This document shows, in pieces, positions 1 through 63,912 of a stretch of 64,000 bases of DNA (position 1 is its first letter; the number at the start of each line of letters is the position of its first letter). This DNA is from Macrostomum lignano (lineage: Eukaryota). Under the pieces are notes generated by a model. That model made no database searches, was not told where the DNA came from, and saw only the letters and a list, made by a program, of their open reading frames with translations. Position numbers and translations under genes: made by a program. Where the stretch lies: contig NIVC01000142.1 in the NCBI GenBank assembly GCA_002269645.1, positions 682,001 through 746,000 on the forward strand, read 5' to 3'.

Positions 1-2270
1 TCAGTGTCTTCTGATCCTTCAGGGTGTCCATCAGTGTTGTCTGATCCTTCACGGTGTCCATCAGCGTCTTCTGATCCTTCAGGGTGTCCATCAGTGTTGT
101 CTGATCCTTCACGGTGTCCATCAGTGTCTTCTGATCCTTCTGGGTGTCCATCGATATCTTCTAATCCTTCTGGGTGTCCATCGATGTCTTCTAATCCTTC
201 TGGGTGTCCATCGATATCTTCTAATCCTTCTGGGTGTCCATCGATATCTTCTAATCCTTCTGGGTGTCCATCGATATCTTCTAATCCTTCTGGGTGTCCA
301 TCGATATCTTCTAATCCTTCTGGGTGTCCATCGATATCTTCTAATCCTTCTGGGTGTCCATCGATGTCTTCTAATCCTTCTGGGTGTCCATCAGTGTCTT
401 CGGATCCTTCAGGTTGTCCATCAGTGTTTTCTAATCTTTCTTGGTGTCCATCAGTGTTGTCTGATCCTTCACGGTGTCCATCAGCGTCTTCTGATCCTTC
501 AGGGTGTCCATCAGTGTTGTCTGATCCTTCACGGTGTCCATCAGTGTCTTCTGATCCTTCACGGTGTCCATCAGTGTCTTCTGATCCTTCAGGGTGTCCA
601 TCAGTGTCTTCTGATCCTTCTGGGTGTCCATCAGTGTTGTCTGATCCTTCACGGTGTCCATCAGTGTCTTCTGATCCTTCAGGGTGTCCATCAGTGTTGT
701 CTGATCCTTCACGGTGTCCATCAGTGTCTTCTGATCCTTCAGGGTGTCCATCAGTGTTGTCTGATCCTTCACGGTGTCCATCAGTGTCTTCTGATCCTTC
801 ACGGTGTCCATCAGTGTTGTCTGATCCTTCACGGTGTCCATCAGCGTCTTCTGATCCTTCAGGGTGTCCATCAGTGTTGTCTGATCCTTCACGGTGTCCA
901 TCAGTGTCTTCTGATCCTTCTGGGTGTCCATCGATATCTTCTAATCCTTCTGGGTGTCCATCGATGTCTTCTAATCCTTCTGGGTGTCCATCGATATCTT
1001 CTAATCCTTCTGGGTGTCCATCGATATCTTCTAATCCTTCTGGGTGTCCATCGATATCTTCTAATCCTTCTGGGTGTCCATCGATATCTTCTAATCCTTC
1101 TGGGTGTCCATCGATATCTTCTAATCCTTCTGGGTGTCCATCGATGTCTTCTAATCCTTCTGGGTGTCCATCAGTGTCTTCGGATCCTTCAGGTTGTCCA
1201 TCAGTGTTTTCTAATCTTTCTTGGTGTCCATCAGTGTTGTCTGATCCTTCACGGTGTCCATCAGCGTCTTCTGATCCTTCAGGGTGTCCATCAGTGTTGT
1301 CTGATCCTTCACGGTGTCCATCAGTGTCTTCTGATCCTTCACGGTGTCCATCAGTGTCTTCTGATCCTTCAGGGTGTCCATCAGTGTCTTCTGATCCTTC
1401 TGGGTGTCCATCAGTGTTGTCTGATCCTTCACGGTGTCCATCAGTGTCTTCTGATCCTTCAGGGTGTCCATCAGTGTTGTCTGATCCTTCACGGTGTCCA
1501 TCAGTGTCTTCTGATCCTTCAGGGTGTCCATCAGTGTTGTCTGATCCTTCACGGTGTCCATCAGTGTCTTCTGATCCTTCACGGTGTCCATCAGTGTTGT
1601 CTGATCCTTCACGGTGTCCATCAGCGTCTTCTGATCCTTCAGGGTGTCCATCAGTTTTGTCTGATCCTTCACGGTGTCCATCAGTGTCTTCTGATCCTTC
1701 TGGGTGTCCATCGATATCTTCTAATCCTTCTGGGTGTCCATCAGTGTCTTCTGATCCTTCAGGTTGTCCATCAGTGTTTTCTAATCTTTCTTGGTGTCCA
1801 TCAGTGTTGTCTGATCCTTCACGGTGTCCATCAGCGTCTTCTGATCCTTCAGGGTGTCCATCAGTTTTGTCTGATCCTTCACGGTGTCCATCAGTGTCTT
1901 CTGATCCTTCAGGGTGTCCATCAGTGTTTTCTAATCTTTCTTGGTGTCCATCAGTGTTGTCTGATCCTTCAGGGTGTCCATTAGTATCTTCTACTTCTTG
2001 TAGGTGTCCATCAGTGTCTTTGGATCCTTCAGGGTGACTATTAGTGTCTTCTAATCCTTCAGGGTGTCCATAAGTGTTGTCTGATCCTTCAGGGTGTCCA
2101 TTAGTGTCTTCTGATCCTTCAGGGTGTCCATAAGTGTTTTCTGATCCTTCAGGGTGTCCATTAGTGTCTTCTAGGTGTCCATCAGTGTCTTTGGATCCTT
2201 CAGGGTGACTATTAGTGTCTTCTGATCCTTCAGGGTTTCCATCAGTGTCTTCCGATTCTTTAAGGTGTCC
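1..2270. repeat. 30-bp minisatellite (consensus TCAGTGTCTTCTGATCCTTCAGGGTGTCCA) with a 780-bp higher-order duplication
   Basis: 30-bp periodicity from base 1. The variant order of 1-780 recurs at 781-1560. Units decay from about 1980 to 2400. Confidence 0.95.
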
Positions 2271-53178: not shown

Positions 53179-53849
53179 CAAGGACTACTCAAGTAACATA
53201 TATATAGGACGCAACACTCGAAATCTATGGTAAATGTTTTGAAGGCAAGCCGAAAAATACACTACAGAGATAGGAGGTTTTAATTTTTTCAGCACAAAAA
53301 TTGTTACTGCTTTCGATAGTAGAAAGACCCAATGTTCATCTTTTGATATGCTGTGCCTTTCTTTAGCTCTATTGATATTCATGAAGCTTCTTGTTCAGAA
53401 AATTAGGATTCTATGCTAATGTTTTATTCTACGTACATCCTGTACCTAAAAATAAAAAAATGCATGGCACTGCTCCAAACAGGTTCATAGGTTCTATGAA
53501 TCTATTTTATCATCTCTGTTACACATATTGTTACACAGTCAGCTAAGAATAACAAAATGGATTCATAAAACCAATGAGCTGAGCCGTGCCATTTTAATGA
53601 TTTTTAGGCACAGGAGACATGCAAATGTACGTAGAATAAGAATTGAACATTGAATCCTAATTTTCTGAACAAATGCTTTATGAATATCAATAGAGCAATA
53701 AGAAAGGCACAACATATTAAAAGATGAACATTGGGTCTTTCTCCTATCGAAAGCAATAACAATTTTTGTGCTGAAAAAATTAAAACCTCCTATCCCTGTA
53801 GTGTATTTTTCGGCTTGCCTTCAAAACATTTACCCTTGAGTTGTCCTTG
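53179..53849. mobile_element. Foldback-type non-autonomous DNA transposon with about 290-bp inverted arms and an 8-bp TSD (AGCAGGGG)
   Basis: Ends CAAGGACTACTCAAG and CTTGAGTTGTCCTTG. Inner arms about 53229-53508 and 53553-53834 are reverse complements. AGCAGGGG lies at 53171-53178 and 53850-53857. Confidence 0.75.
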
Positions 53850-56412: not shown

Positions 56413-56868
56413 ACAATATTCTTGGTTGCGTCCGAGAATTCGCAAAGATTTAGAATTAAAAAACGAATACGCTAAACTTAAAAACTTAAACTTAAGAACT
56501 TAAAAAAGCAAATAAGTCTAGCAAAAAGATAAGAACTTCGTCAAATATAGTCGCAAGAGCAGACCCGCTTTAGAAAATCAGACACCAGCGCACTGCGACG
56601 AATTCCCAAAAATAAACATTTATTTTACTTCTTGCAAAAAATTGAACAGGAGTTTTTCCAGTATTGACTCTGTTGAAATTAATTAATTTAAAATTTTTAA
56701 GCATGGCTGATTATAGCCAAAATCTCGGCAACGATGTGCATTGAAGCCGTGCCTATGCAGTGCACATATATTTATTAAACGATTAGACATACAATTTGAG
56801 ACAGGTGGCGATGCACTTATTGTTGCACACTCAGACAAGTTCTTCACTGGAATATAAGTTGGCAGGTA

Positions 56869-57862
56869 CGAGAGATGATCAAAAAGGTTGTCACTGCTAA
56901 ATTTTTCAGTACATGGAAGTTTTTAAAATTTGATTTCAGGTGTTACTACAAACACACATTGTTCCATACTTGGGAAAACTTTGTAGCTTTACCTTCTCAG
57001 CTCAAGATCTCGTAGTTCTTTTCATCTCGAAAGAAATCGAAGCCCATGGAAGCTGCGGCATCATCTGATGGATTGATGAACCACGCAGTGGGCGACTTAA
57101 GGACCTCTACCACCAGCCAGACTGCCGTTGAGCATGTCAGACGAAGACAGGCTGAAGTAGCAGAAGCCTGTGGCATCAACTATGGCAGTGCGCAGTCCAT
57201 CCTGACCATCCAACTTGGAATGTCAAAATTGTGCCAGGTTGGTGCCAAAAGTAGGTACAAGCATGCCAACAGCTGCTCCACCTGATGCAGTATCGCCGAG
57301 ACACAAGTTTCTGGACTCTATCTAGACTTTTGTTCTCATTTATTGTTATCCCTTCATGAGTCGGAGGCTAAAGTCTAGAGTATGCAGTGGAAGCGCTACG
57401 ATGAAGCCACTCTGCTGAAGGCCAAGACAGTGTAGTGTCATCGAGGAAGAAAATAATGAGCAATATTTTCTGGGATCGACAGAGTGCTGCAGATTGAGTG
57501 CACTACGCCACATTGCGCCAGCTCAGGGCCATCAAAGAGAAGAGGCTTGTGGTAAGGTCACCAAGGTCACCGTGCAATTTCCTTGCCTCCGTCGGATTTC
57601 TGTTTCCAACTTTAAAGAATTCGCTGCTGGGCCAACACTGAGCTCCAGTGACTGGGCTGGCTTCCTCAGTGAACCAGTGGTGCAAACACCTGGATGAGGA
57701 GTGGTATTTAGAAGGCAGTTAAGTGCCGCCAGATCGCTGCGTCAAGTACGTGTCAACTGCATGGAAACTTGGATGGAAATTTTCAGGACGTTTGACAATC
57801 GCATTGTTGTTTAATTTGTTTCCAGTTAATATTCCCAGTGACAGCTTTTTTATCGTCCCTCA
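56869..57862 (+). mobile_element. Degenerate mariner-family transposon relic
   Basis: TA-flanked degenerate TIRs (TACGAGAGATGATCAAAAAGG versus reverse-complement TATGAGGGACGATAAAAAAGC). Broken transposase fragments INYGSAQSILTIQLGMSKL, SMQWK...KAKTV and IFWD. Confidence 0.75.
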
Positions 57863-58559
57863 TAAAGCTAGCTTACATGCCAGCCGGTTTACAGCACAGA
57901 TACTAAAATAACCAGATGGGCCACTCAGGCATATATATCTTACATAGTATATCAGCTTTCTACTTTCAGTTCAGTAGCAAAGAAGAATGCATTTAGGCTA
58001 TTTTATAAAAAAGGCAGCTGAAACGACTAACAAGTTTAGAAGCCCAAGCTTGCAGTCGTAAAGAATTTGCTAATTGGTTTAGCAATAATGTACATTAGCC
58101 AGTCCATTGAAATCTACATGGCAGCTTTAGGCTGGAATTCCGAGGAATACAATAAAAATTGGGGCGAGGCGGGGGGCAGTGTAGAAAGGCGCGGTTTAAG
58201 GTTTTAAACTGGGGGGCCCATGAAGGGGGTAAGAGCCAATAAATGAGCCTTGGCTTTAAAAATACATTAAAATGCTTCTGTTTAACACACTTCTGAACTG
58301 AAAGTAGCTTACACGCAAATGTGCTGAGTGGCCCATCTAGTTATTCTAGTATGTGTGGTTTACAGATTCCTTAATAATATAATATTAATCTGGATAGCAA
58401 TGATGCTTAATTGATAAAAAAACAGTTCAACTTTAGGAGGCGATAAATATCGGGCACTAGTAGTGATCAACGGGTTTTTAAAGGAAAATTTATTAAACTG
58501 GACAGAATGAGGAACAGGGTGAACTAAAACATTATTTTTGCCACTAAATACATAAAATA

Positions 58560-59545
58560 CGAGGGGTGTCCAAAAAGTAGTGACACCTTCAACTGCAGCT
58601 CCCGTTCTACAGCTTCCTGTCATTTAAAATTTTAAGAACTAATAGCGGCAAATCTCTTCTATAGACTGCTTTTTTGAATTTTTAAAATTGATACCAGAGA
58701 ACAAAAGTTATACCCACAAAAGCAACAGCACCCGTATCATAGAGTTACACAAACTATATCAAAATTTATGATAGTCGACTTCTGCACTCATTCATTAAGA
58801 AGGCATCGATAAATGTCTTGTTTAAGCAATACCAAAGCCCAATTGCAAAATGATGCTCATTGTGACTGACTGAAATTTGTCTATGGACGGAATCATGCGC
58901 AGAAAAATAAAGCATTAAATTCATTACTTTACTTGCAAACAGAGGAGCTTGCATTTTTCAATTGATTTCATTGCCCATACTCGACAACACACATGGATGT
59001 GCACTCAGTTGTTGCTCAGCAAAGTACTATCTTCACTTTTTGGGGCACTGGCCATAGTGCCTCAGAAATTCACGCAAAACTTTGCTCTGCGCACGGATCC
59101 TCTGTGGTCAGCAAAATGACAGTTTATCGATGGATGGAGCAGTTCAGCGAGGGAAGGACTGACTTGGCAGATCAGCATCGGATGGGGTGGCCATACGTTC
59201 ATTGACCTGATGTACTGGCGGACTCCATTCTGGATCTTCTTGACGAGGACTCCCGAATGACCATTAGAGAGATCGCTGACAGGTTGGACAAGCCGAAATC
59301 AACAATTCATTGAAGCTTACTCAGCATGGATCTCGTGAAGCTCAGCCTATAATTTGTGTAACTCTATGATACAGGCACTGTCACTTTCATGGGTACAACT
59401 CTTGTTCCCTAGTATCAATTTTAAAAATTAAAAAAGCAGTCTGTAAAAGAGATTTGCCGCTATTAGTTCTTAAAATTTTAAATCACAGGAAGCTACAGAA
59501 CGAGAGCCACAGCTGAAAGTATCACTACCCTTTGGACACCCCTCG
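58560..59545 (+). mobile_element. Mariner-family relic with about 200-bp terminal inverted arms and a catalytically deleted transposase fragment
   Basis: TA|CGAGGGGTGTCCAAA at both ends, inverted. Arms 58558-58758 and 59348-59547. Internal HTH-region fragments SASEIHAKLCSAHG..VVSKMTVYRWMEQFSEGRTDLADQHR and LDEDSRMTIREIADRL; no DD34D domain. Confidence 0.88.
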
Positions 59546-59621
59546 TATAATCAGCAACGTTTTTCTCACACCCCTACTTCAAGTAGTTTTTCTACCATTA
59601 GTTGTAACATAATAATAATTG

Positions 59622-62600
59622 TTAGAGGACATAAAAGAGTTCGTGCCGCTTATAACTGTTCTTATCGTCGTCTGGTACGCTGGGATAGCCGCTGACCAAA
59701 CAGTCGGGATTGCCAATGTATACTGTGTTGTACACCTTCCACATCATGTCGCGCACCTTCCTAGCCGGATGGAACAGGCCAGCCAGGCAGTACTGCAGCA
59801 CCCGGGTGTGGCCCAGGCTGACCCGGCAGCCTTCAACAACGGACATGAATGCTTGCACAACGTGCGGCGATGTTTCAAACACGTTTGGCCAGGCAAAATT
59901 AAGCAGGTGAGTGAGCGCGTCCTCGCAGCCGAAACCGTACACACCCAGAGCCATGTGGCCGATGGTGAACATGGCTGTCTGCCTGTGCACGAGGTCCCTG
60001 TCCATCAGGGCGTCCTCCAGCAGAGGGACCACCGCGTAAACGTAGTCCTTGCCCATCTCGCCGATGTATTCAAACATGAATGAAAGCGATTTCAGTACAC
60101 CGTTTTGAACGTTGAGCTCAGGTACGCGGTACTCGTTCATTAGGCCAGGCAATACGGTGAACGGCGAGCAGTTCTCAGCGACAATAGCGATGGCCACTGT
60201 TGTGCAGACACGGTTCTGGCGTTCTTGCACCTGCGGATGGGTTGGATGGGGTTAAAACAGCGATTCTTTGATTCTGTTTTAAGACGAGATTTAAAGATGG
60301 CGATTCTCAACTACTCAGAAAAAAACCATATTTTATCAACTTACTACTTATTAAGTAGCTAGAAGACAACAAAAAACGGTGACACTCCAAGAAAATAAAA
60401 CTTAATGGTATGATTTAACATATATTAGCTACAGGAATTGAGTAGTCGTAGGCCTCGAGCTACATAATATTCAAGTACAAAGTGTCTCGGTAAGCAAGCA
60501 ATATCGGCCTCACCTTGAGATTATTGAGCAGAGTTGCCAGCACATCATGCGGACCAATAGCTTTGGCAATGTAGCCGAACGTGTTAACTGTGGCCCGTCT
60601 GATACTCTTCTTGTGCGCCTTGAGCAATTCGAGCAGCTCGAAGCAGATGCGCATCCACTCCTTGACGCTGACGAACTCGGAGCCGCGGTCGGCGATGCGG
60701 CCAACCAGGTCGATGCAGTTCTCCTGCACTTTCTCGTGCCGGTTCTTTAGAATAGGCGTCAGCCTAGGAAGCAGATCCTTGATTGGCGGCGTCATCTTGT
60801 TCATCCCGATGACATTCACGATGGCTTTCAATGCGCCTAGAATCGAGCCTAGGACCTCCGGGTACTCCTCGCCGAGGTACTCGTACAGCACAACGCCAAG
60901 ATGGCCCATCAAGCGCTCCTCCTGGCAGGCTTTCATAACGCCAGCTATGCGGCTAATGAGATCGGCCACCTGTTGGCGCACTTTGGCCGACTTGTTGTTC
61001 AGGCGCCAGAGAATGTTGCCGCAGATCTGGGGCAGGTAGGGCTTCACCCGCTTACCCAGAGCGTTCACCAGGGTGCCGAAGCCGTTCAGCATCACAGCGT
61101 CCTCGTTTGTCTGCTCCGAGAAGGCGAACATTACGCCATCGACTAGCTGTTCTTCGAGACGCGAGTCAACCTCAGTGGCACCCAGATTGTTGAGCACCTT
61201 CTCAACCGTATCCATGACCATTTTGCGATACTGCTCAGATGGCTCTTTGAGATCGTCCACAATTCGATTGAGAATCTCTGCCGAACCAACTTTGTTGGCA
61301 ATCTCGACTGTGGTGTCCACCAATTGGCGGTAGTTCCGCCTGTCCGAGGCCATCTTCTGGGTCCAGAAGTGCTTGAAAAATGACGGCAAAATGTCTTTCT
61401 TGATGTAAGCCGGCTCAACACCCTCGGTGGAGCAGCACTGTTTCACTACTTTGAGCACAATTTTCTTCATCTCTTCGTCAGGCGACTGGAACTCGCGGAT
61501 TAAGATGAGCATAACCTCGCGAGTATAATAATTGGCGTACTCGGCGTCCATTAAGGGAATGAGGTAGCCAATGGCTTTGAGAAAAGCGGCCAGACCTTTG
61601 CCTCGGTGGGTACGGATGCCTTTCCATAGCGGTTTGAGCACGGTATCAAACGACTCAATGCCGTAGGGCGTGGCGGACTCGGCCAGAGCTGCCAGAGCCA
61701 GAGCGGTGATAGTTCGCACCTTCTGCTGCTCGTCAACCAGGCCCAGTTCGATAATTTCAACCAGAGAGCGCAGATGCGGCAGCACAGCGCAGCCCATCAG
61801 GATGGCAATCTGTTGCACTATTTTGATACCAGTGTGCCTGGCCTGCCAGCTACGCTTCGACTTGCACACGGCCTTGAGAAACAATAGCAGACTGGGAATG
61901 CCTAGCGCTGAGGCCACCACAGCGAAAGCTCTGGCCGTGGTGTTACGCACGTATTCGTCCATGTTCTCCAGATCCGGACGCATTGTGGTGATCATGGTTG
62001 CCAGGCCGGCCGCTTTGGCCAGGTTAGAAATAATCTCGCGGCCTTCTACGCGAGCATAATAGTCTTCATCGATGAGCAGCGGCTCAATCACTACCAGGAT
62101 TTTGTGGACGAACGGCCGCACCAAATCGTCCAGCTTGTAGAGCACCCGGTCAATCACTTTCACAAGCAGGTGGCGCTCCTGATCCTCCAGTGTCGGCGAC
62201 ATCAACAGCGGCAGGATCTGATTGAAGAGCGGGCCGGCACCGAACTCTCTGGACTTCTCGGTGATCTGGCGGAGCGCGGATTTGCGCATCGGTGGCGTGC
62301 CGTTTTTGATCTTCAACAGCAGAGTCATAATACGACGCTCCCGCAGCTCATCGGCCGACAGGCTGTCCTCGTCAACATCGGTGAGCAGCTTGTCGAAGTA
62401 CTGCATATCGTCGGGCTTCAGCATTGGCAGATTGGTGCCTTTAGGCTGCATATCCGCCAAGGCTGTGCCCGTAGACGTCCGAACATCCGGCGTGGCCATC
62501 TTGAAGCCACCGGGCGTCGTCAGCGGAGTCGGCGTTGCAGTCAAACGACGCGGCGTTCGCAGCGGCACATAGCCGGCCGGCGGAGCCAGCACCTTGTAGC

Positions 62601-63912
62601 CTTCGGGCAGCATGGCATCCAGATCTTCGTCAGAGAGCGGCCGGTTGCGGTCATCCAGCTCCTTCTGCGCGGAGAATATCTGCATCTGCTCCGGGGTCAT
62701 GGCGGCGGCTGCAACTGCTGCACTGGGCGTGGCCATCTCCATTGCCTTCACGCCCATCGGAGTCACCCCGCTTGGGGTCATGACCCCGCCAGGTGTAAAA
62801 CCGCTCGGCGTGGCCGACGCCGGCGTTGCTACGCTCGGCGTTGCGTCGGCGACATTTGATGGCGTCTCGCCGGGCGTCTCGTCCCAACGCGAGCGCCGCT
62901 TGCCAGCCTGCGGCGTCTCCTGAATCAGGTCGGCGGCGGTCCGGTCCGCGCGCGGCGTCTCGCCCCAGCCACCGGGAGTCGCTTCGTCCCATCTATTTCG
63001 CCGGCCCATTGGTGTTGTAGCCGACGGCGTGGCGTCGAAGTGGCCGGGCGTTTCACCCCGAGTTGACATATGTACGGGCGTCTCCGCCCACTGCCGCTCG
63101 TTGAATTGCCCCGGTGCCGGCGTGGCGTCGCCGCCGCTGATGCGGCCGGGCGTCTCCGCCCACTGACGCACGCTGGCCGACGGGGTGGCGGCGCCGCTGG
63201 CCGACATGGCCGACGGGGTGCCGGCATCCGCCTCGAAGCCAGTCTGGAAGAATTACATGTTAGCGTTTATGTCATTTATTTGACATGAGCTTAATATCAT
63301 ATGATCAAACTTAAGTGTAAAAAGTGCCACCAATCCCTGAACACCTAGCAACCACCTCAGACACCTAACAACCAAACCCATAAACACCCTAGAAACCTAG
63401 AAACCACCTCAGACACCTAACAACCAAATCCATAAACACCCTAGCAACTACCGCAGACACCTAACAACCAAACCCATAAACACCTTAGCAACCACCGCAG
63501 ACACCTAACAACCAAACCCATAAACATCCTAGCAACCACTGCAGACACCTAACAACCAAACCCATAAACATCCTAGCAACCACTGCAGACACCTAACAAC
63601 CAAACCCATAAACATCCTAGCAACCACTGCAGACACCTAACAACCAAACCCATAAACACCCTAGCAACCATACTGAAATACAAAAATCTACCTTCTTGGC
63701 CTGCGGAGTGTCTCCGCTCTCGGCCGGGACGTCCCACCGACCGCGTTTCTTGGCCGGCGCAGCCTCCTGCTGCTGCGGCATCACTGTGCGCAGCTCGCCA
63801 GCCTTGAACTTCTCCGCCATTTGCTGACGCAGCTCGGCCTGTTGCCTGGTCAGCGCCTGTGACTGCATTATGTCTCGATACGTCTGCAGGCTGTTGTCCG
63901 GCGTTTTGCCGC
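59622..63912 (-). CDS. SF3B1: Splicing factor 3B subunit 1, last three exons (63912-63692, 63243-60514, 60230-59622); the 5' part lies beyond the window
   Basis: GKTPD, RWD/ETP (ULM and TP) motifs, [25 protein letters not shown] repeats with conserved [32 protein letters not shown] and [13 protein letters not shown], and C-terminal ELFYVL*. GT/AG junctions are in phase. Confidence 0.98.
63335..63672. repeat. About 44-bp intronic tandem repeat (CCTAGCAACCACYGCAGACACCTAACAACCAAACCCATAAACA core)
   Basis: In an SF3B1 intron. Confidence 0.9.

What the first reader, a model, noticed from the sequence alone, without database searches (positions are those of the whole stretch)
58558..59547. Strand-asymmetric divergence of 200-bp inverted arms: 23 of 25 substitutions are G-U wobbles on the minus strand
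Seen by hand alignment of 58558-58758 with the reverse complement of 59348-59547: 23 differences are left A/right G or left C/right T, 1 is the opposite transition, 1 is a transversion, and there is 1 indel. If transition direction were random, 23 vs 1 has a two-sided binomial probability of about 3e-6. All 23 keep pairing as G-U in a minus-strand RNA hairpin, but are A-C mismatches on the + strand. Several CA/TG doublets imply ancestral CpG with C-to-T on the minus strand in both arms, and non-CpG sites are affected too. Sampled mismatches in the foldback arms at 53179-53849 run in both directions. Inference: either selection to keep a long RNA stem while removing perfect dsRNA, or a strand-specific deamination process acting on this hairpin.
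Basis: partly seen in the sequence, partly recalled or inferred. Interest (0 to 1): 0.75.

Follow-up and report, generated by a model that had tools for sequence, protein, structure and literature searches.

The report
RNA-editing footprint in a transposon hairpin
A broken mariner transposon sits in the 3' untranslated region of one copy of the flatworm (Macrostomum lignano) SF3B1 gene, and its two 200-base arms differ almost only by A-to-G changes on the gene's sense strand; this is the mark of ADAR RNA editing of a hairpin, and it most likely entered this reference because the assembly was polished with RNA-seq reads, not because the DNA mutated.

Summary
The arms 58560-58758 and 59348-59545 differ at 25 positions. 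Twenty-three have one polarity, one is the opposite transition, one is a transversion, and there is one indel (binomial p = 3e-6).

The window is M. lignano assembly Mlig_3_7, NIVC01000142.1:682001-746000. The element is a fold-back, internally deleted mariner with a TA duplication. Two sister loci carry clean empty sites.

It lies inside the ancestral ~160-nt 3'UTR of SF3B1, 74 nt after the stop codon and 64 nt before the conserved AATAAA. The minus strand is the mRNA sense strand, and that allele's mRNA should carry the 200-bp hairpin.

Two outgroup mariners polarise 11 of 11 informative sites as A-to-G on the minus strand, in both arms. This is not C-to-T and not CpG decay.

The rate is about 20 times the lineage-specific flank rate. 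The loop shows no matching skew. A control foldback has a normal spectrum.

This is the ADAR hyper-editing signature. Mlig_3_7 was polished with Pilon using RNA-seq data (PMC5730564). My best reading (about 0.55) is real RNA editing written into the reference. Genuine DNA change is not excluded. Mapping genomic reads and RNA reads separately would decide.

The parts
58558..58559 (.). Left TA target-site duplication
   Evidence: The empty sites in L005 and L002 read AAAATA|TAAT..., with a single TA.
58560..58758 (.). Left arm. This is the native 5' end of the mariner (terminal repeat plus 5' leader) and forms the 3' half of the stem in the minus-strand RNA. It carries 12 plus-strand T-to-C changes, which are A-to-G on the minus strand.
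   Evidence: Arm alignment. The terminal 27 nt are 96% identical to the end of the L008 mariner. The inner part is homologous to the leader upstream of the L007 ORF.
58759..59347 (.). Unpaired loop of 589 nt. It shows no G/C skew (G130, C128), whereas the arms have C greater than G.
   Evidence: Composition; fold.
58995..59346 (+). Remnant of the mariner transposase N-terminus (HTH_48/HTH_32) with two in-frame TGA stops. The DDE catalytic domain is absent.
   Evidence: Translation; Pfam. It is 86% identical to the M. lignano protein P0131, which has Arg where this copy has stops.
59348..59545 (.). Right arm. This is an inverted duplicate of the left 199 nt and forms the 5' half of the stem in the minus-strand RNA. 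It carries 11 A-to-G changes on the minus strand.
59546..59547 (.). Right TA target-site duplication
59548..59621 (-). Proximal 74 nt of the SF3B1 3'UTR, between the stop codon and the element
   Evidence: The same 74 nt are present in the empty alleles.
59622..60233 (-). Last coding exon of SF3B1; the stop codon is at 59622-59624
   Evidence: tblastn of P0001 (UniRef A0A1I8H332, M. lignano) residues 1002-1204, 99.5% identity.
58489..58494 (-). AATAAA on the minus strand, 64 nt beyond the left end of the element. It is the only AATAAA or ATTAAA on that strand between the stop codon and 58489.
   Evidence: It is conserved 138-139 nt after the stop codon in the empty alleles L002 and L005.

Best explanation
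Shown:
- The element is a non-autonomous fold-back derivative of a mariner transposon. Its native 5' 199 nt are duplicated in inverted orientation in place of the 3' part.
- It inserted at a TA inside the ~160-nt 3'UTR of one of several SF3B1 copies of Macrostomum lignano.

Inferred from anatomy:
- The element has no poly(A) signal on the sense strand, so mRNA from this allele must read through it to the original AATAAA.
- That mRNA therefore carries a ~200-bp, originally about 99% perfect, double-stranded RNA stem.

Shown by outgroup polarisation:
- The 23 one-directional differences are A-to-G on that sense strand: 11 in one arm and 12 in the other.
- No matching skew is seen in the loop.
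- This is what ADAR A-to-I hyper-editing produces. A-U pairs become I-U pairs, which sequencers read as G-U.

Inferred:
- RNA editing does not change DNA.
- The Mlig_3_7 reference was polished with Pilon using RNA-seq reads as well as genomic reads.
- At strongly edited sites of a well-expressed gene, RNA reads probably outvoted genomic reads, and G was written into the assembly.
- The other 2 substitutions and the indel would then be the only true differences between the arms (about 1%). That fits a young insertion.
For: - Organism and assembly: SF3B1 is 100% identical to M. lignano A0A1I8H332. The window is identical to GCA_002269645.1 NIVC01000142.1.
- Insertion status: L002 and L005 have clean empty sites with a single TA.
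- Position and strand: the stop codon is at 59622-59624 on the minus strand. The element starts 74 nt downstream of it. The conserved AATAAA lies just beyond the element, and there is none inside it.
- Polarity: 11 of 11 informative sites are A-to-G on the minus strand.
- Excess over background: 23 of 134 A in the arms against 2 of 244 in the flank, p = 2e-9. Transition:transversion is 24:1 in the arms, against 14:15 in the control foldback and 5:8 in the flank.
- Arm specificity: the loop has G130 and C128, while the arms are skewed. In 69 loop codons compared with P0131, only 2 differences have the T-to-C direction, and several CpG C-to-T changes lie on the opposite strand.
- Neighbour preference: it points in the ADAR direction, with 5' T13 A7 G2 C1 and 3' G at 7 of 23 against a background of 29 of 134. 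The motif is described in PMC4365171.
- Structure: the minus-strand RNA stem is nearly continuous.
- Editing in flatworms: ADAR2-dependent A-to-I editing is documented in a free-living flatworm (PMC8797187).
Against: - No reads could be examined, so it is not shown that genomic DNA has A at these sites.
- Transcription through the element is inferred from anatomy, not observed.
- The presence of ADAR in M. lignano was not tested.
- For Pilon to flip 23 sites, each needs majority G among mapped reads. Before editing the arms are near-identical reverse complements, so unpaired reads would map ambiguously.
- The AT-rich middle of both arms (about 58611-58694) has many A but only one change. This is not explained.
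- The outgroups are distant (about 73% identity, or only the terminal repeat) and AT-rich. A chance match would favour A/T (11 of 11 has p of about 0.007 even at a 0.64 bias). Twelve sites remain unpolarised.
- No second example was found in the ~170 kb of M. lignano DNA held.
Confidence: 0.55

Rival explanations
1. The changes are real germline DNA changes copied from edited RNA. In this reading the SF3B1 3'UTR hairpin was hyper-edited by ADAR. The edited transcript, or a cDNA of it, then served as a template for repair or gene conversion of the chromosomal copy. Alternatively, ADAR deaminated dA in a DNA:RNA hybrid.
For: It rests on the same evidence as the best explanation: sense strand, arm-limited, A-to-G, hypermutation-level rate. 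It explains why the bases are in the deposited sequence without invoking an artefact.
Against: No such event is documented for a DNA transposon hairpin in an animal germline. The last SF3B1 intron (60234-60507) is intact, so any cDNA conversion tract must stop within about 700 nt. In an R-loop the DNA strand paired with sense RNA is the plus strand, so editing it would give the opposite polarity. A documented technical route exists.
Confidence: 0.12
2. The pattern was inherited. The asymmetric arms were already present in the donor copy before it transposed into the SF3B1 3'UTR, so the link to SF3B1 transcription is a coincidence.
For: At 12% the arms are more diverged than the young age of the insertion allows for ordinary mutation. 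Pre-insertion divergence would be the simplest explanation if the DNA is real. At least one other family copy exists in the genome (P0131).
Against: It still needs a one-strand, transition-only, A-to-G process that acts on a DNA transposon. It leaves the orientation (a 50% chance) and the exact placement in a 3'UTR as coincidences. A 12% mismatch in a terminal repeat, including 2 changes in the conserved terminal 27 nt of one end, would not favour mobilisation. No other copy could be retrieved to test it.
Confidence: 0.1
3. Purifying selection keeps the RNA stem. Ordinary mutations occur on both strands, and only those that leave a G-U wobble in the minus-strand RNA survive.
For: All 23 changes preserve pairing in the minus-strand RNA. 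Transversions and A-C-forming transitions are nearly absent.
Against: Selection cannot raise the rate. About 0.7 A-to-G changes are expected from the flank rate, and 23 are observed. Among polarised sites 11 are A-to-G and 0 are C-to-T, although C-to-T also gives G-U and is usually the commoner mutation. There are no compensatory double changes. The element is absent from sister alleles that function without it.
Confidence: 0.05
4. Strand-specific cytosine deamination of DNA, giving C-to-T on the minus strand. This could be methyl-CpG decay, an APOBEC-like enzyme, or exposure of the non-template strand during transcription.
For: Under this polarity 9 of 16 CpG cytosines, against 14 of 68 other cytosines, would be hit. 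CpG is depleted in non-coding DNA here (observed/expected 0.57-0.64). Differences between element copies in the loop are mostly CpG transitions.
Against: The outgroups show A/T and not G/C at 11 of 11 informative sites, and TA and not CG at one doublet. CpG decay is strand-symmetric, and in the loop it is seen on the plus strand. There is no skew in the loop or the flank.
Confidence: 0.05
5. General transcription-coupled or replication-linked mutational asymmetry of the region, which becomes visible only because an inverted repeat lets it be measured.
For: An excess of A-to-G on the sense strand of transcribed regions is a known, mild asymmetry in mammals (background knowledge, not tested here).
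Against: Known asymmetries are below 2-fold, not 23:1. The lineage-specific changes in the flank and in the exon/intron show no bias. The loop shows no skew.
Confidence: 0.03

Closest known systems
ADAR A-to-I hyper-editing of inverted-repeat hairpins in 3'UTRs (inverted Alu pairs in human mRNAs, 3'UTR hairpins in C. elegans; hyper-edited clusters, PMC4365171)
   Same: A long, near-perfect intramolecular dsRNA built from a transposon-derived inverted repeat in a 3'UTR. Dense clusters of A-to-G on the expressed strand only, on both arms, none in the loop. About 17% of A are affected. G is rare 5' and commoner 3' of the sites.
   Different: Here the G bases are in the deposited genome sequence, not in RNA reads compared with DNA. 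The repeat is the two arms of a single fold-back mariner, not two separate elements. No editing data exist for this species.
Genomic footprints of nucleic-acid editing in retroelements (APOBEC G-to-A clusters and ADAR A-to-G clusters fixed in retrotransposon or endogenous retrovirus copies; recalled from memory, not checked here)
   Same: One-strand, transition-only hypermutation clusters that become visible by comparing related repeat sequences in a genome.
   Different: Those elements replicate through RNA or single-stranded cDNA, so editing can be inherited. A cut-and-paste mariner has no such stage, which is why a real DNA footprint here would be unexpected.
Repeat-induced point mutation (RIP) in fungi
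   Same: Transition-only, strand-biased hypermutation of duplicated DNA.
   Different: RIP is C-to-T (CpA context) in fungi. Here the polarity is A-to-G and the host is an animal.
Reference errors introduced by polishing with transcriptome reads
   Same: The assembly methods include RNA-seq in the Pilon step. The changes are confined to a transcribed strand and to the RNA-editing class.
   Different: I found no published description of editing sites imprinted in an assembly in this way, so the match is by mechanism and not by precedent.

Membership tests
Tc1/mariner DNA transposon (non-autonomous fold-back derivative) | TA target-site duplication and a precise empty site | tested here: met
   TA at 58558-58559 and at 59546-59547. 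L005 and L002 join the flanks with a single TA.
Tc1/mariner DNA transposon (non-autonomous fold-back derivative) | Terminal inverted repeats related to those of a known mariner | tested here: met
   The terminal 27 nt are 96% identical to the end of L008, a contig that encodes HTH_48, DDE_3 and Transposase_1.
Tc1/mariner DNA transposon (non-autonomous fold-back derivative) | Transposase with an N-terminal paired HTH domain and a DD(D/E) catalytic domain | tested here: not met
   Only the HTH part remains (HTH_48 at 1e-8, HTH_32 at 4e-9), with 2 stops. The catalytic domain is replaced by the inverted arm. The element is therefore a remnant and not an active member.
ADAR hyper-edited dsRNA cluster | A long dsRNA formed by the transcribed strand | tested here: inconclusive
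   A ~200-bp stem is predicted for the minus strand. The minus strand is SF3B1 sense, and the element lies between the stop codon and the conserved AATAAA. Transcription itself was not observed.
ADAR hyper-edited dsRNA cluster | Mismatches are A-to-G on the expressed strand only | tested here: met
   23 of 25 changes have one polarity. 11 of 11 outgroup-informative sites are A-to-G on the minus strand.
ADAR hyper-edited dsRNA cluster | Sequence motif: G depleted 5' and G enriched 3' of the site | tested here: inconclusive
   5' G is 2 of 23 against 17 of 134 in the background. 3' G is 7 of 23 against 29 of 134. 5' T is enriched (p = 0.035). The direction is right but the numbers are small.
ADAR hyper-edited dsRNA cluster | Genomic DNA has A where RNA has G, and the change depends on ADAR | not testable with these tools
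   No reads are available. ADAR in M. lignano was not checked. Planarian ADAR2 editing is known (PMC8797187).
Cytosine-deamination hypermutation (RIP, APOBEC-like, methyl-CpG decay) | The derived base is T (or A on the other strand) from an ancestral C (or G) | tested here: not met
   The outgroups carry A/T at all 11 informative sites.
Structured RNA maintained by selection | Compensatory double substitutions, and a substitution rate at or below the neutral rate | tested here: not met
   There are no compensatory pairs, only wobble-forming single changes. The rate is about 20 times that of the flank.

The most novel reading that the evidence does not exclude
The G bases are really in the germline DNA. 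An ADAR-hyper-edited 3'UTR hairpin of SF3B1 was copied back into the chromosome by RNA-templated repair or cDNA gene conversion. The result would be a heritable, strand-specific A-to-G hypermutation of a DNA-transposon inverted repeat, which means RNA editing hard-wired into an animal genome in a single step.
Probability: 0.12. Interest if true: 0.9.

Novelty: new member of a known kind. Interest (0 to 1): 0.45.

Why it matters
Two consequences follow if the best reading holds.

- It would be the first sequence-level indication that Macrostomum lignano hyper-edits transposon-derived dsRNA. The site is specific and easy to assay, because it sits in the 3'UTR of an essential splicing gene and edited and empty alleles coexist in the same animal.
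- The widely used Mlig_3_7 reference may carry RNA-editing events as if they were genomic bases wherever RNA-seq outvoted DNA in polishing. Editing scans run against this reference would then miss the strongest sites, and such regions would be misread as diverged or mutated DNA.

If the bases are truly genomic, the locus would be evidence for transfer of edited RNA sequence into germline DNA, which would be a major finding.

Tried and rejected
- No other copy of the element exists in the window or in five further M. lignano loci.
- Exact-pattern scans of metagenome, prokaryote-genome and viral collections found nothing, either with a conserved arm 28-mer or with the terminal repeat.
- A word-indexed protein search with the transposase remnant found nothing, although the exhaustive search later found P0131.
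- P0131 exists only in UniProt and has no contig. A search with P0131 returned no NCBI-anchored relative. Its tail does not map to this locus, so it is a different copy.
- An exact look-up of the SF3B1 ORF failed. Access to the assembly came through cluster members instead.
- Polarising by neighbour context alone was inconclusive. CpG enrichment under C-to-T and TpA enrichment under A-to-G are both driven by the palindromic doublets.
- Rfam found nothing in the window.
- Literature searches found no report of RNA editing in M. lignano and no report of editing imprinted by RNA-seq polishing.
- Rejected explanations: RIP or APOBEC-type C-to-T (polarity), selection for the stem (rate and polarity), regional transcription or replication asymmetry (flank and loop are unbiased), and native long terminal repeats of the family (in the relative L008, similarity to the arm ends after about 33 nt).

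Full report
**1. The observation.**
I aligned 58540-58780 with the reverse complement of 59330-59570. This gave 202 aligned columns and 25 substitutions. Twelve are left C/right' T, eleven are left A/right' G, one is left T/right' C, and one is a C/G transversion. There is one single-base indel. Ten of the 23 one-directional changes form five adjacent doublets. The repeat finder and BLAST agree on the arms. A 23:1 split has a two-sided binomial p of 3e-6.

The minus-strand RNA folds into an almost uninterrupted ~200-bp stem (MFE -478 kcal/mol). The plus-strand stem is broken by A-C mismatches (MFE -406).

The normal spectrum in this genome is thus about 1:1 and unpolarised. The 24:1 transition excess in the element is a second anomaly (Fisher p = 2e-4).

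**2. What the element is.**
Its ends read TA|CGAGGGGTGTCCAAA...TTTGGACACCCCTCG|TA. The interior, on the plus strand at 58995-59346, encodes the N-terminal HTH_48/HTH_32 DNA-binding part of a mariner transposase with two stop codons. There is no catalytic domain.

An exhaustive protein search found three relatives:
- a second M. lignano copy (P0131, 86% identical over 69 residues);
- a metagenome contig with a related leader and ORF (L007);
- a metagenome contig carrying a complete mariner (L008).

The end of L008 matches the first 27 nt of the arm at 96%, and similarity ends after about 33 nt. L007 carries sequence homologous to the inner left arm just upstream of its ORF. The left arm is therefore the native 5' end plus leader. 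The right arm is an inverted duplicate that replaced the 3' part. This makes the element a fold-back deletion derivative whose arms were presumably identical when it formed.

**3. Where it is.**
The 915-residue ORF next to the element is SF3B1, 100% identical to Macrostomum lignano A0A1I8H332. The cluster members gave access to the NCBI assembly GCA_002269645.1 (Mlig_3_7). Locus L001 (NIVC01000142.1) is identical to the window, which corresponds to NIVC01000142.1:682001-746000.

SF3B1 lies on the minus strand. Its exons are 63913-63698, 63249-60508 and 60233-59625, and the stop codon is at 59622-59624. The element begins 74 nt downstream of the stop codon.

Two sister loci (L002 and L005, 96-99% identical in the flanks) lack the element. 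They join the flanks with a single TA. In those empty alleles an AATAAA lies 138-139 nt after the stop codon. The same signal is present in the window at 58489-58494, 64 nt beyond the element. No AATAAA or ATTAAA occurs on the minus strand inside the element.

The element therefore sits in the middle of an ancestral ~160-nt 3'UTR. An mRNA from this allele should contain the whole hairpin, with the minus strand as the sense strand. This last step is inferred from anatomy. I have no expression data.

**4. Age and rate.**
Changes private to the window lineage, where L002 and L005 agree against it, number 13 in 866 non-coding flank columns (1.5%). Five are transitions and eight are transversions, with no directional bias. 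There are 3 such changes in 948 columns of UTR, exon and intron.

The insertion is no older than this split. Ordinary mutation should therefore have produced only a few arm differences, half of them transversions. The 1 transversion, 1 opposite transition and 1 indel fit that expectation (about 1%). The 23 remaining changes are an overlay at roughly 20 times the background: 23 of 134 minus-strand A in the arms against 2 of 244 in the flank (Fisher p = 2e-9).

Selection can only remove mutations. It cannot create this excess, which rules out the 'keep the stem' reading unless the divergence predates the insertion.

**5. Polarity.**
Neighbour context alone could not decide between C-to-T and A-to-G on the minus strand, so I used the two outgroups.
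- In the conserved terminal repeat, L008 has AA where the left arm has AA and the right arm has GG. It has T where the right arm has T and the left arm has C.
- In the inner arm, a 14-mer of L007 (AGAACAAAAGTTAT) is identical to the left arm and differs from the right arm at three variable sites.
- L007 has TA at the doublet 58723-58724, A at 58730, and T at 58695 and 58733.

All 11 informative sites give A (or T on the plus strand) as ancestral. The derived base is G on the minus strand, in both arms.

Caveats apply. The outgroups are distant and AT-rich (11 of 11 still has p of about 0.007 under a 0.64 bias). One or two T matches could be parallel CpG decay. Twelve sites remain unpolarised.

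**6. Restriction to the arms.**
The arms are skewed on the plus strand (C44/G30 and C41/G32), but the 589-nt loop is not (C128/G130). In the 69 loop codons that can be compared with P0131, only two differences have the T-to-C direction. Several are plus-strand CpG C-to-T changes, including both stop codons. This is the opposite strand from the arm changes. The evidence is limited, but it argues against a process that covers the whole transcribed or replicated region.

**7. Mechanism.**
The pattern has these features:
- A-to-G only;
- only on the expressed strand;
- on both halves of a long perfect duplex;
- not in the loop;
- about 17% of adenosines affected;
- A-U pairs turned into apparent G-U pairs;
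- 5' neighbours T13, A7, G2, C1, and 3' G somewhat enriched.

This is the signature of ADAR hyper-editing of dsRNA (motif as described in PMC4365171). Free-living flatworms have functional ADARs with A-to-I editing (PMC8797187).

RNA editing does not alter DNA, and a cut-and-paste mariner has no RNA stage. The methods of the Mlig_3_7 paper state that the Canu assembly 'was polished with Pilon v. [quoted passage not shown] 2.5.2b' (PMC5730564). Pilon takes the majority base. At strongly edited positions of a well-expressed gene, on an allele that holds only a fraction of the genomic coverage in this hidden polyploid, RNA reads could outvote DNA reads.

I therefore think the most likely account is real ADAR editing of the SF3B1 3'UTR hairpin, imprinted on the reference by RNA-seq polishing (about 0.55).

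**8. What this does not explain, and the rivals.**
I could not inspect reads, so the key claim (DNA = A) is untested. The AT-rich middle of both arms (about 58611-58694) is almost untouched despite many adenosines. Possible reasons are editing spread thinly below the majority threshold, or a mapping effect, but neither is shown. I found no second example in the ~170 kb of M. lignano DNA available.

The rivals are:
- a true RNA-to-DNA transfer of edited sequence (0.12);
- inheritance of the pattern from the donor copy (0.10), which needs the same unexplained chemistry plus coincidences of strand and place;
- stem-preserving selection (0.05);
- cytosine deamination (0.05);
- regional mutational asymmetry (0.03).

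**9. Comparison and novelty.**
Functionally this matches ADAR-edited inverted-repeat hairpins in 3'UTRs, with a single fold-back mariner providing both arms. It is not RIP or an APOBEC footprint, because the polarity test fails. It does not meet the criteria for a selected RNA structure, because there is no compensation and the rate is too high.

As biology it is a new member of a known kind, in a species with no editing data. As a property of the DNA it is probably not real. The practical point is a caution for anyone using Mlig_3_7 to call editing or to study repeat divergence. The test is simple: compare DNA-only and RNA-only pileups at NIVC01000142.1:740560-741545.

Noticed in passing
window 1-2037: An array of about 67 tandem 30-nt units (79-100% identical). 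It is read through by a 677-codon open frame on the plus strand that runs from the window edge. This could be a repetitive protein-coding exon or a minisatellite.
   Followed up: no
window 53221-53842: A second foldback with arms of at least 143 nt at 94% identity (about 290 nt at lower identity) and a short spacer. Its substitution spectrum is ordinary: 14 transitions in both directions and 15 transversions. I used it as the control.
   Followed up: partly
L002 12636-13504 versus window 58383-58510: In sister locus L002, the stretch just downstream of the SF3B1 3'UTR, which includes the AATAAA region, is present as about 9 tandem copies with a 106-nt period. The window and L005 have a single copy.
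   Followed up: no
window 56500-60507 versus 59622-63249: CpG is depleted in non-coding DNA (observed/expected 0.57-0.64 in the flanks and the element loop) but not in the SF3B1 exons (0.93-1.06). Differences between two copies of the mariner loop are all transitions, and most are at CpG. This suggests CpG hypermutability, possibly from methylation, of non-coding and repeat DNA in M. lignano.
   Followed up: partly
window 63250-63697: This SF3B1 intron has an extreme composition skew on the plus strand (C152/G36, A186/T74). It is probably a simple-sequence or CA-rich repeat.
   Followed up: no
L001-L006 (GCA_002269645.1): SF3B1 is present on at least six contigs of the assembly. L003 and L004 share the coding exon with the window but diverge completely 19 nt after the stop codon. 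L002 and L005 share the whole 3' flank. This is consistent with the hidden polyploidy of the DV1 line.
   Followed up: partly
window 57890-57928 and 58324-58362: A 39-nt inverted repeat, 87% complementary and 395 nt apart, just downstream of the SF3B1 poly(A) signal.
   Followed up: no
L007 (activated-sludge metagenome, ERZ937822) and L008/L009 (ENA metagenomes): Mariner elements closely related to this flatworm family occur in environmental metagenome assemblies. They presumably come from small invertebrates in the samples. L008 appears to hold a nearly complete element with HTH and DDE parts in two overlapping frames.
   Followed up: partly
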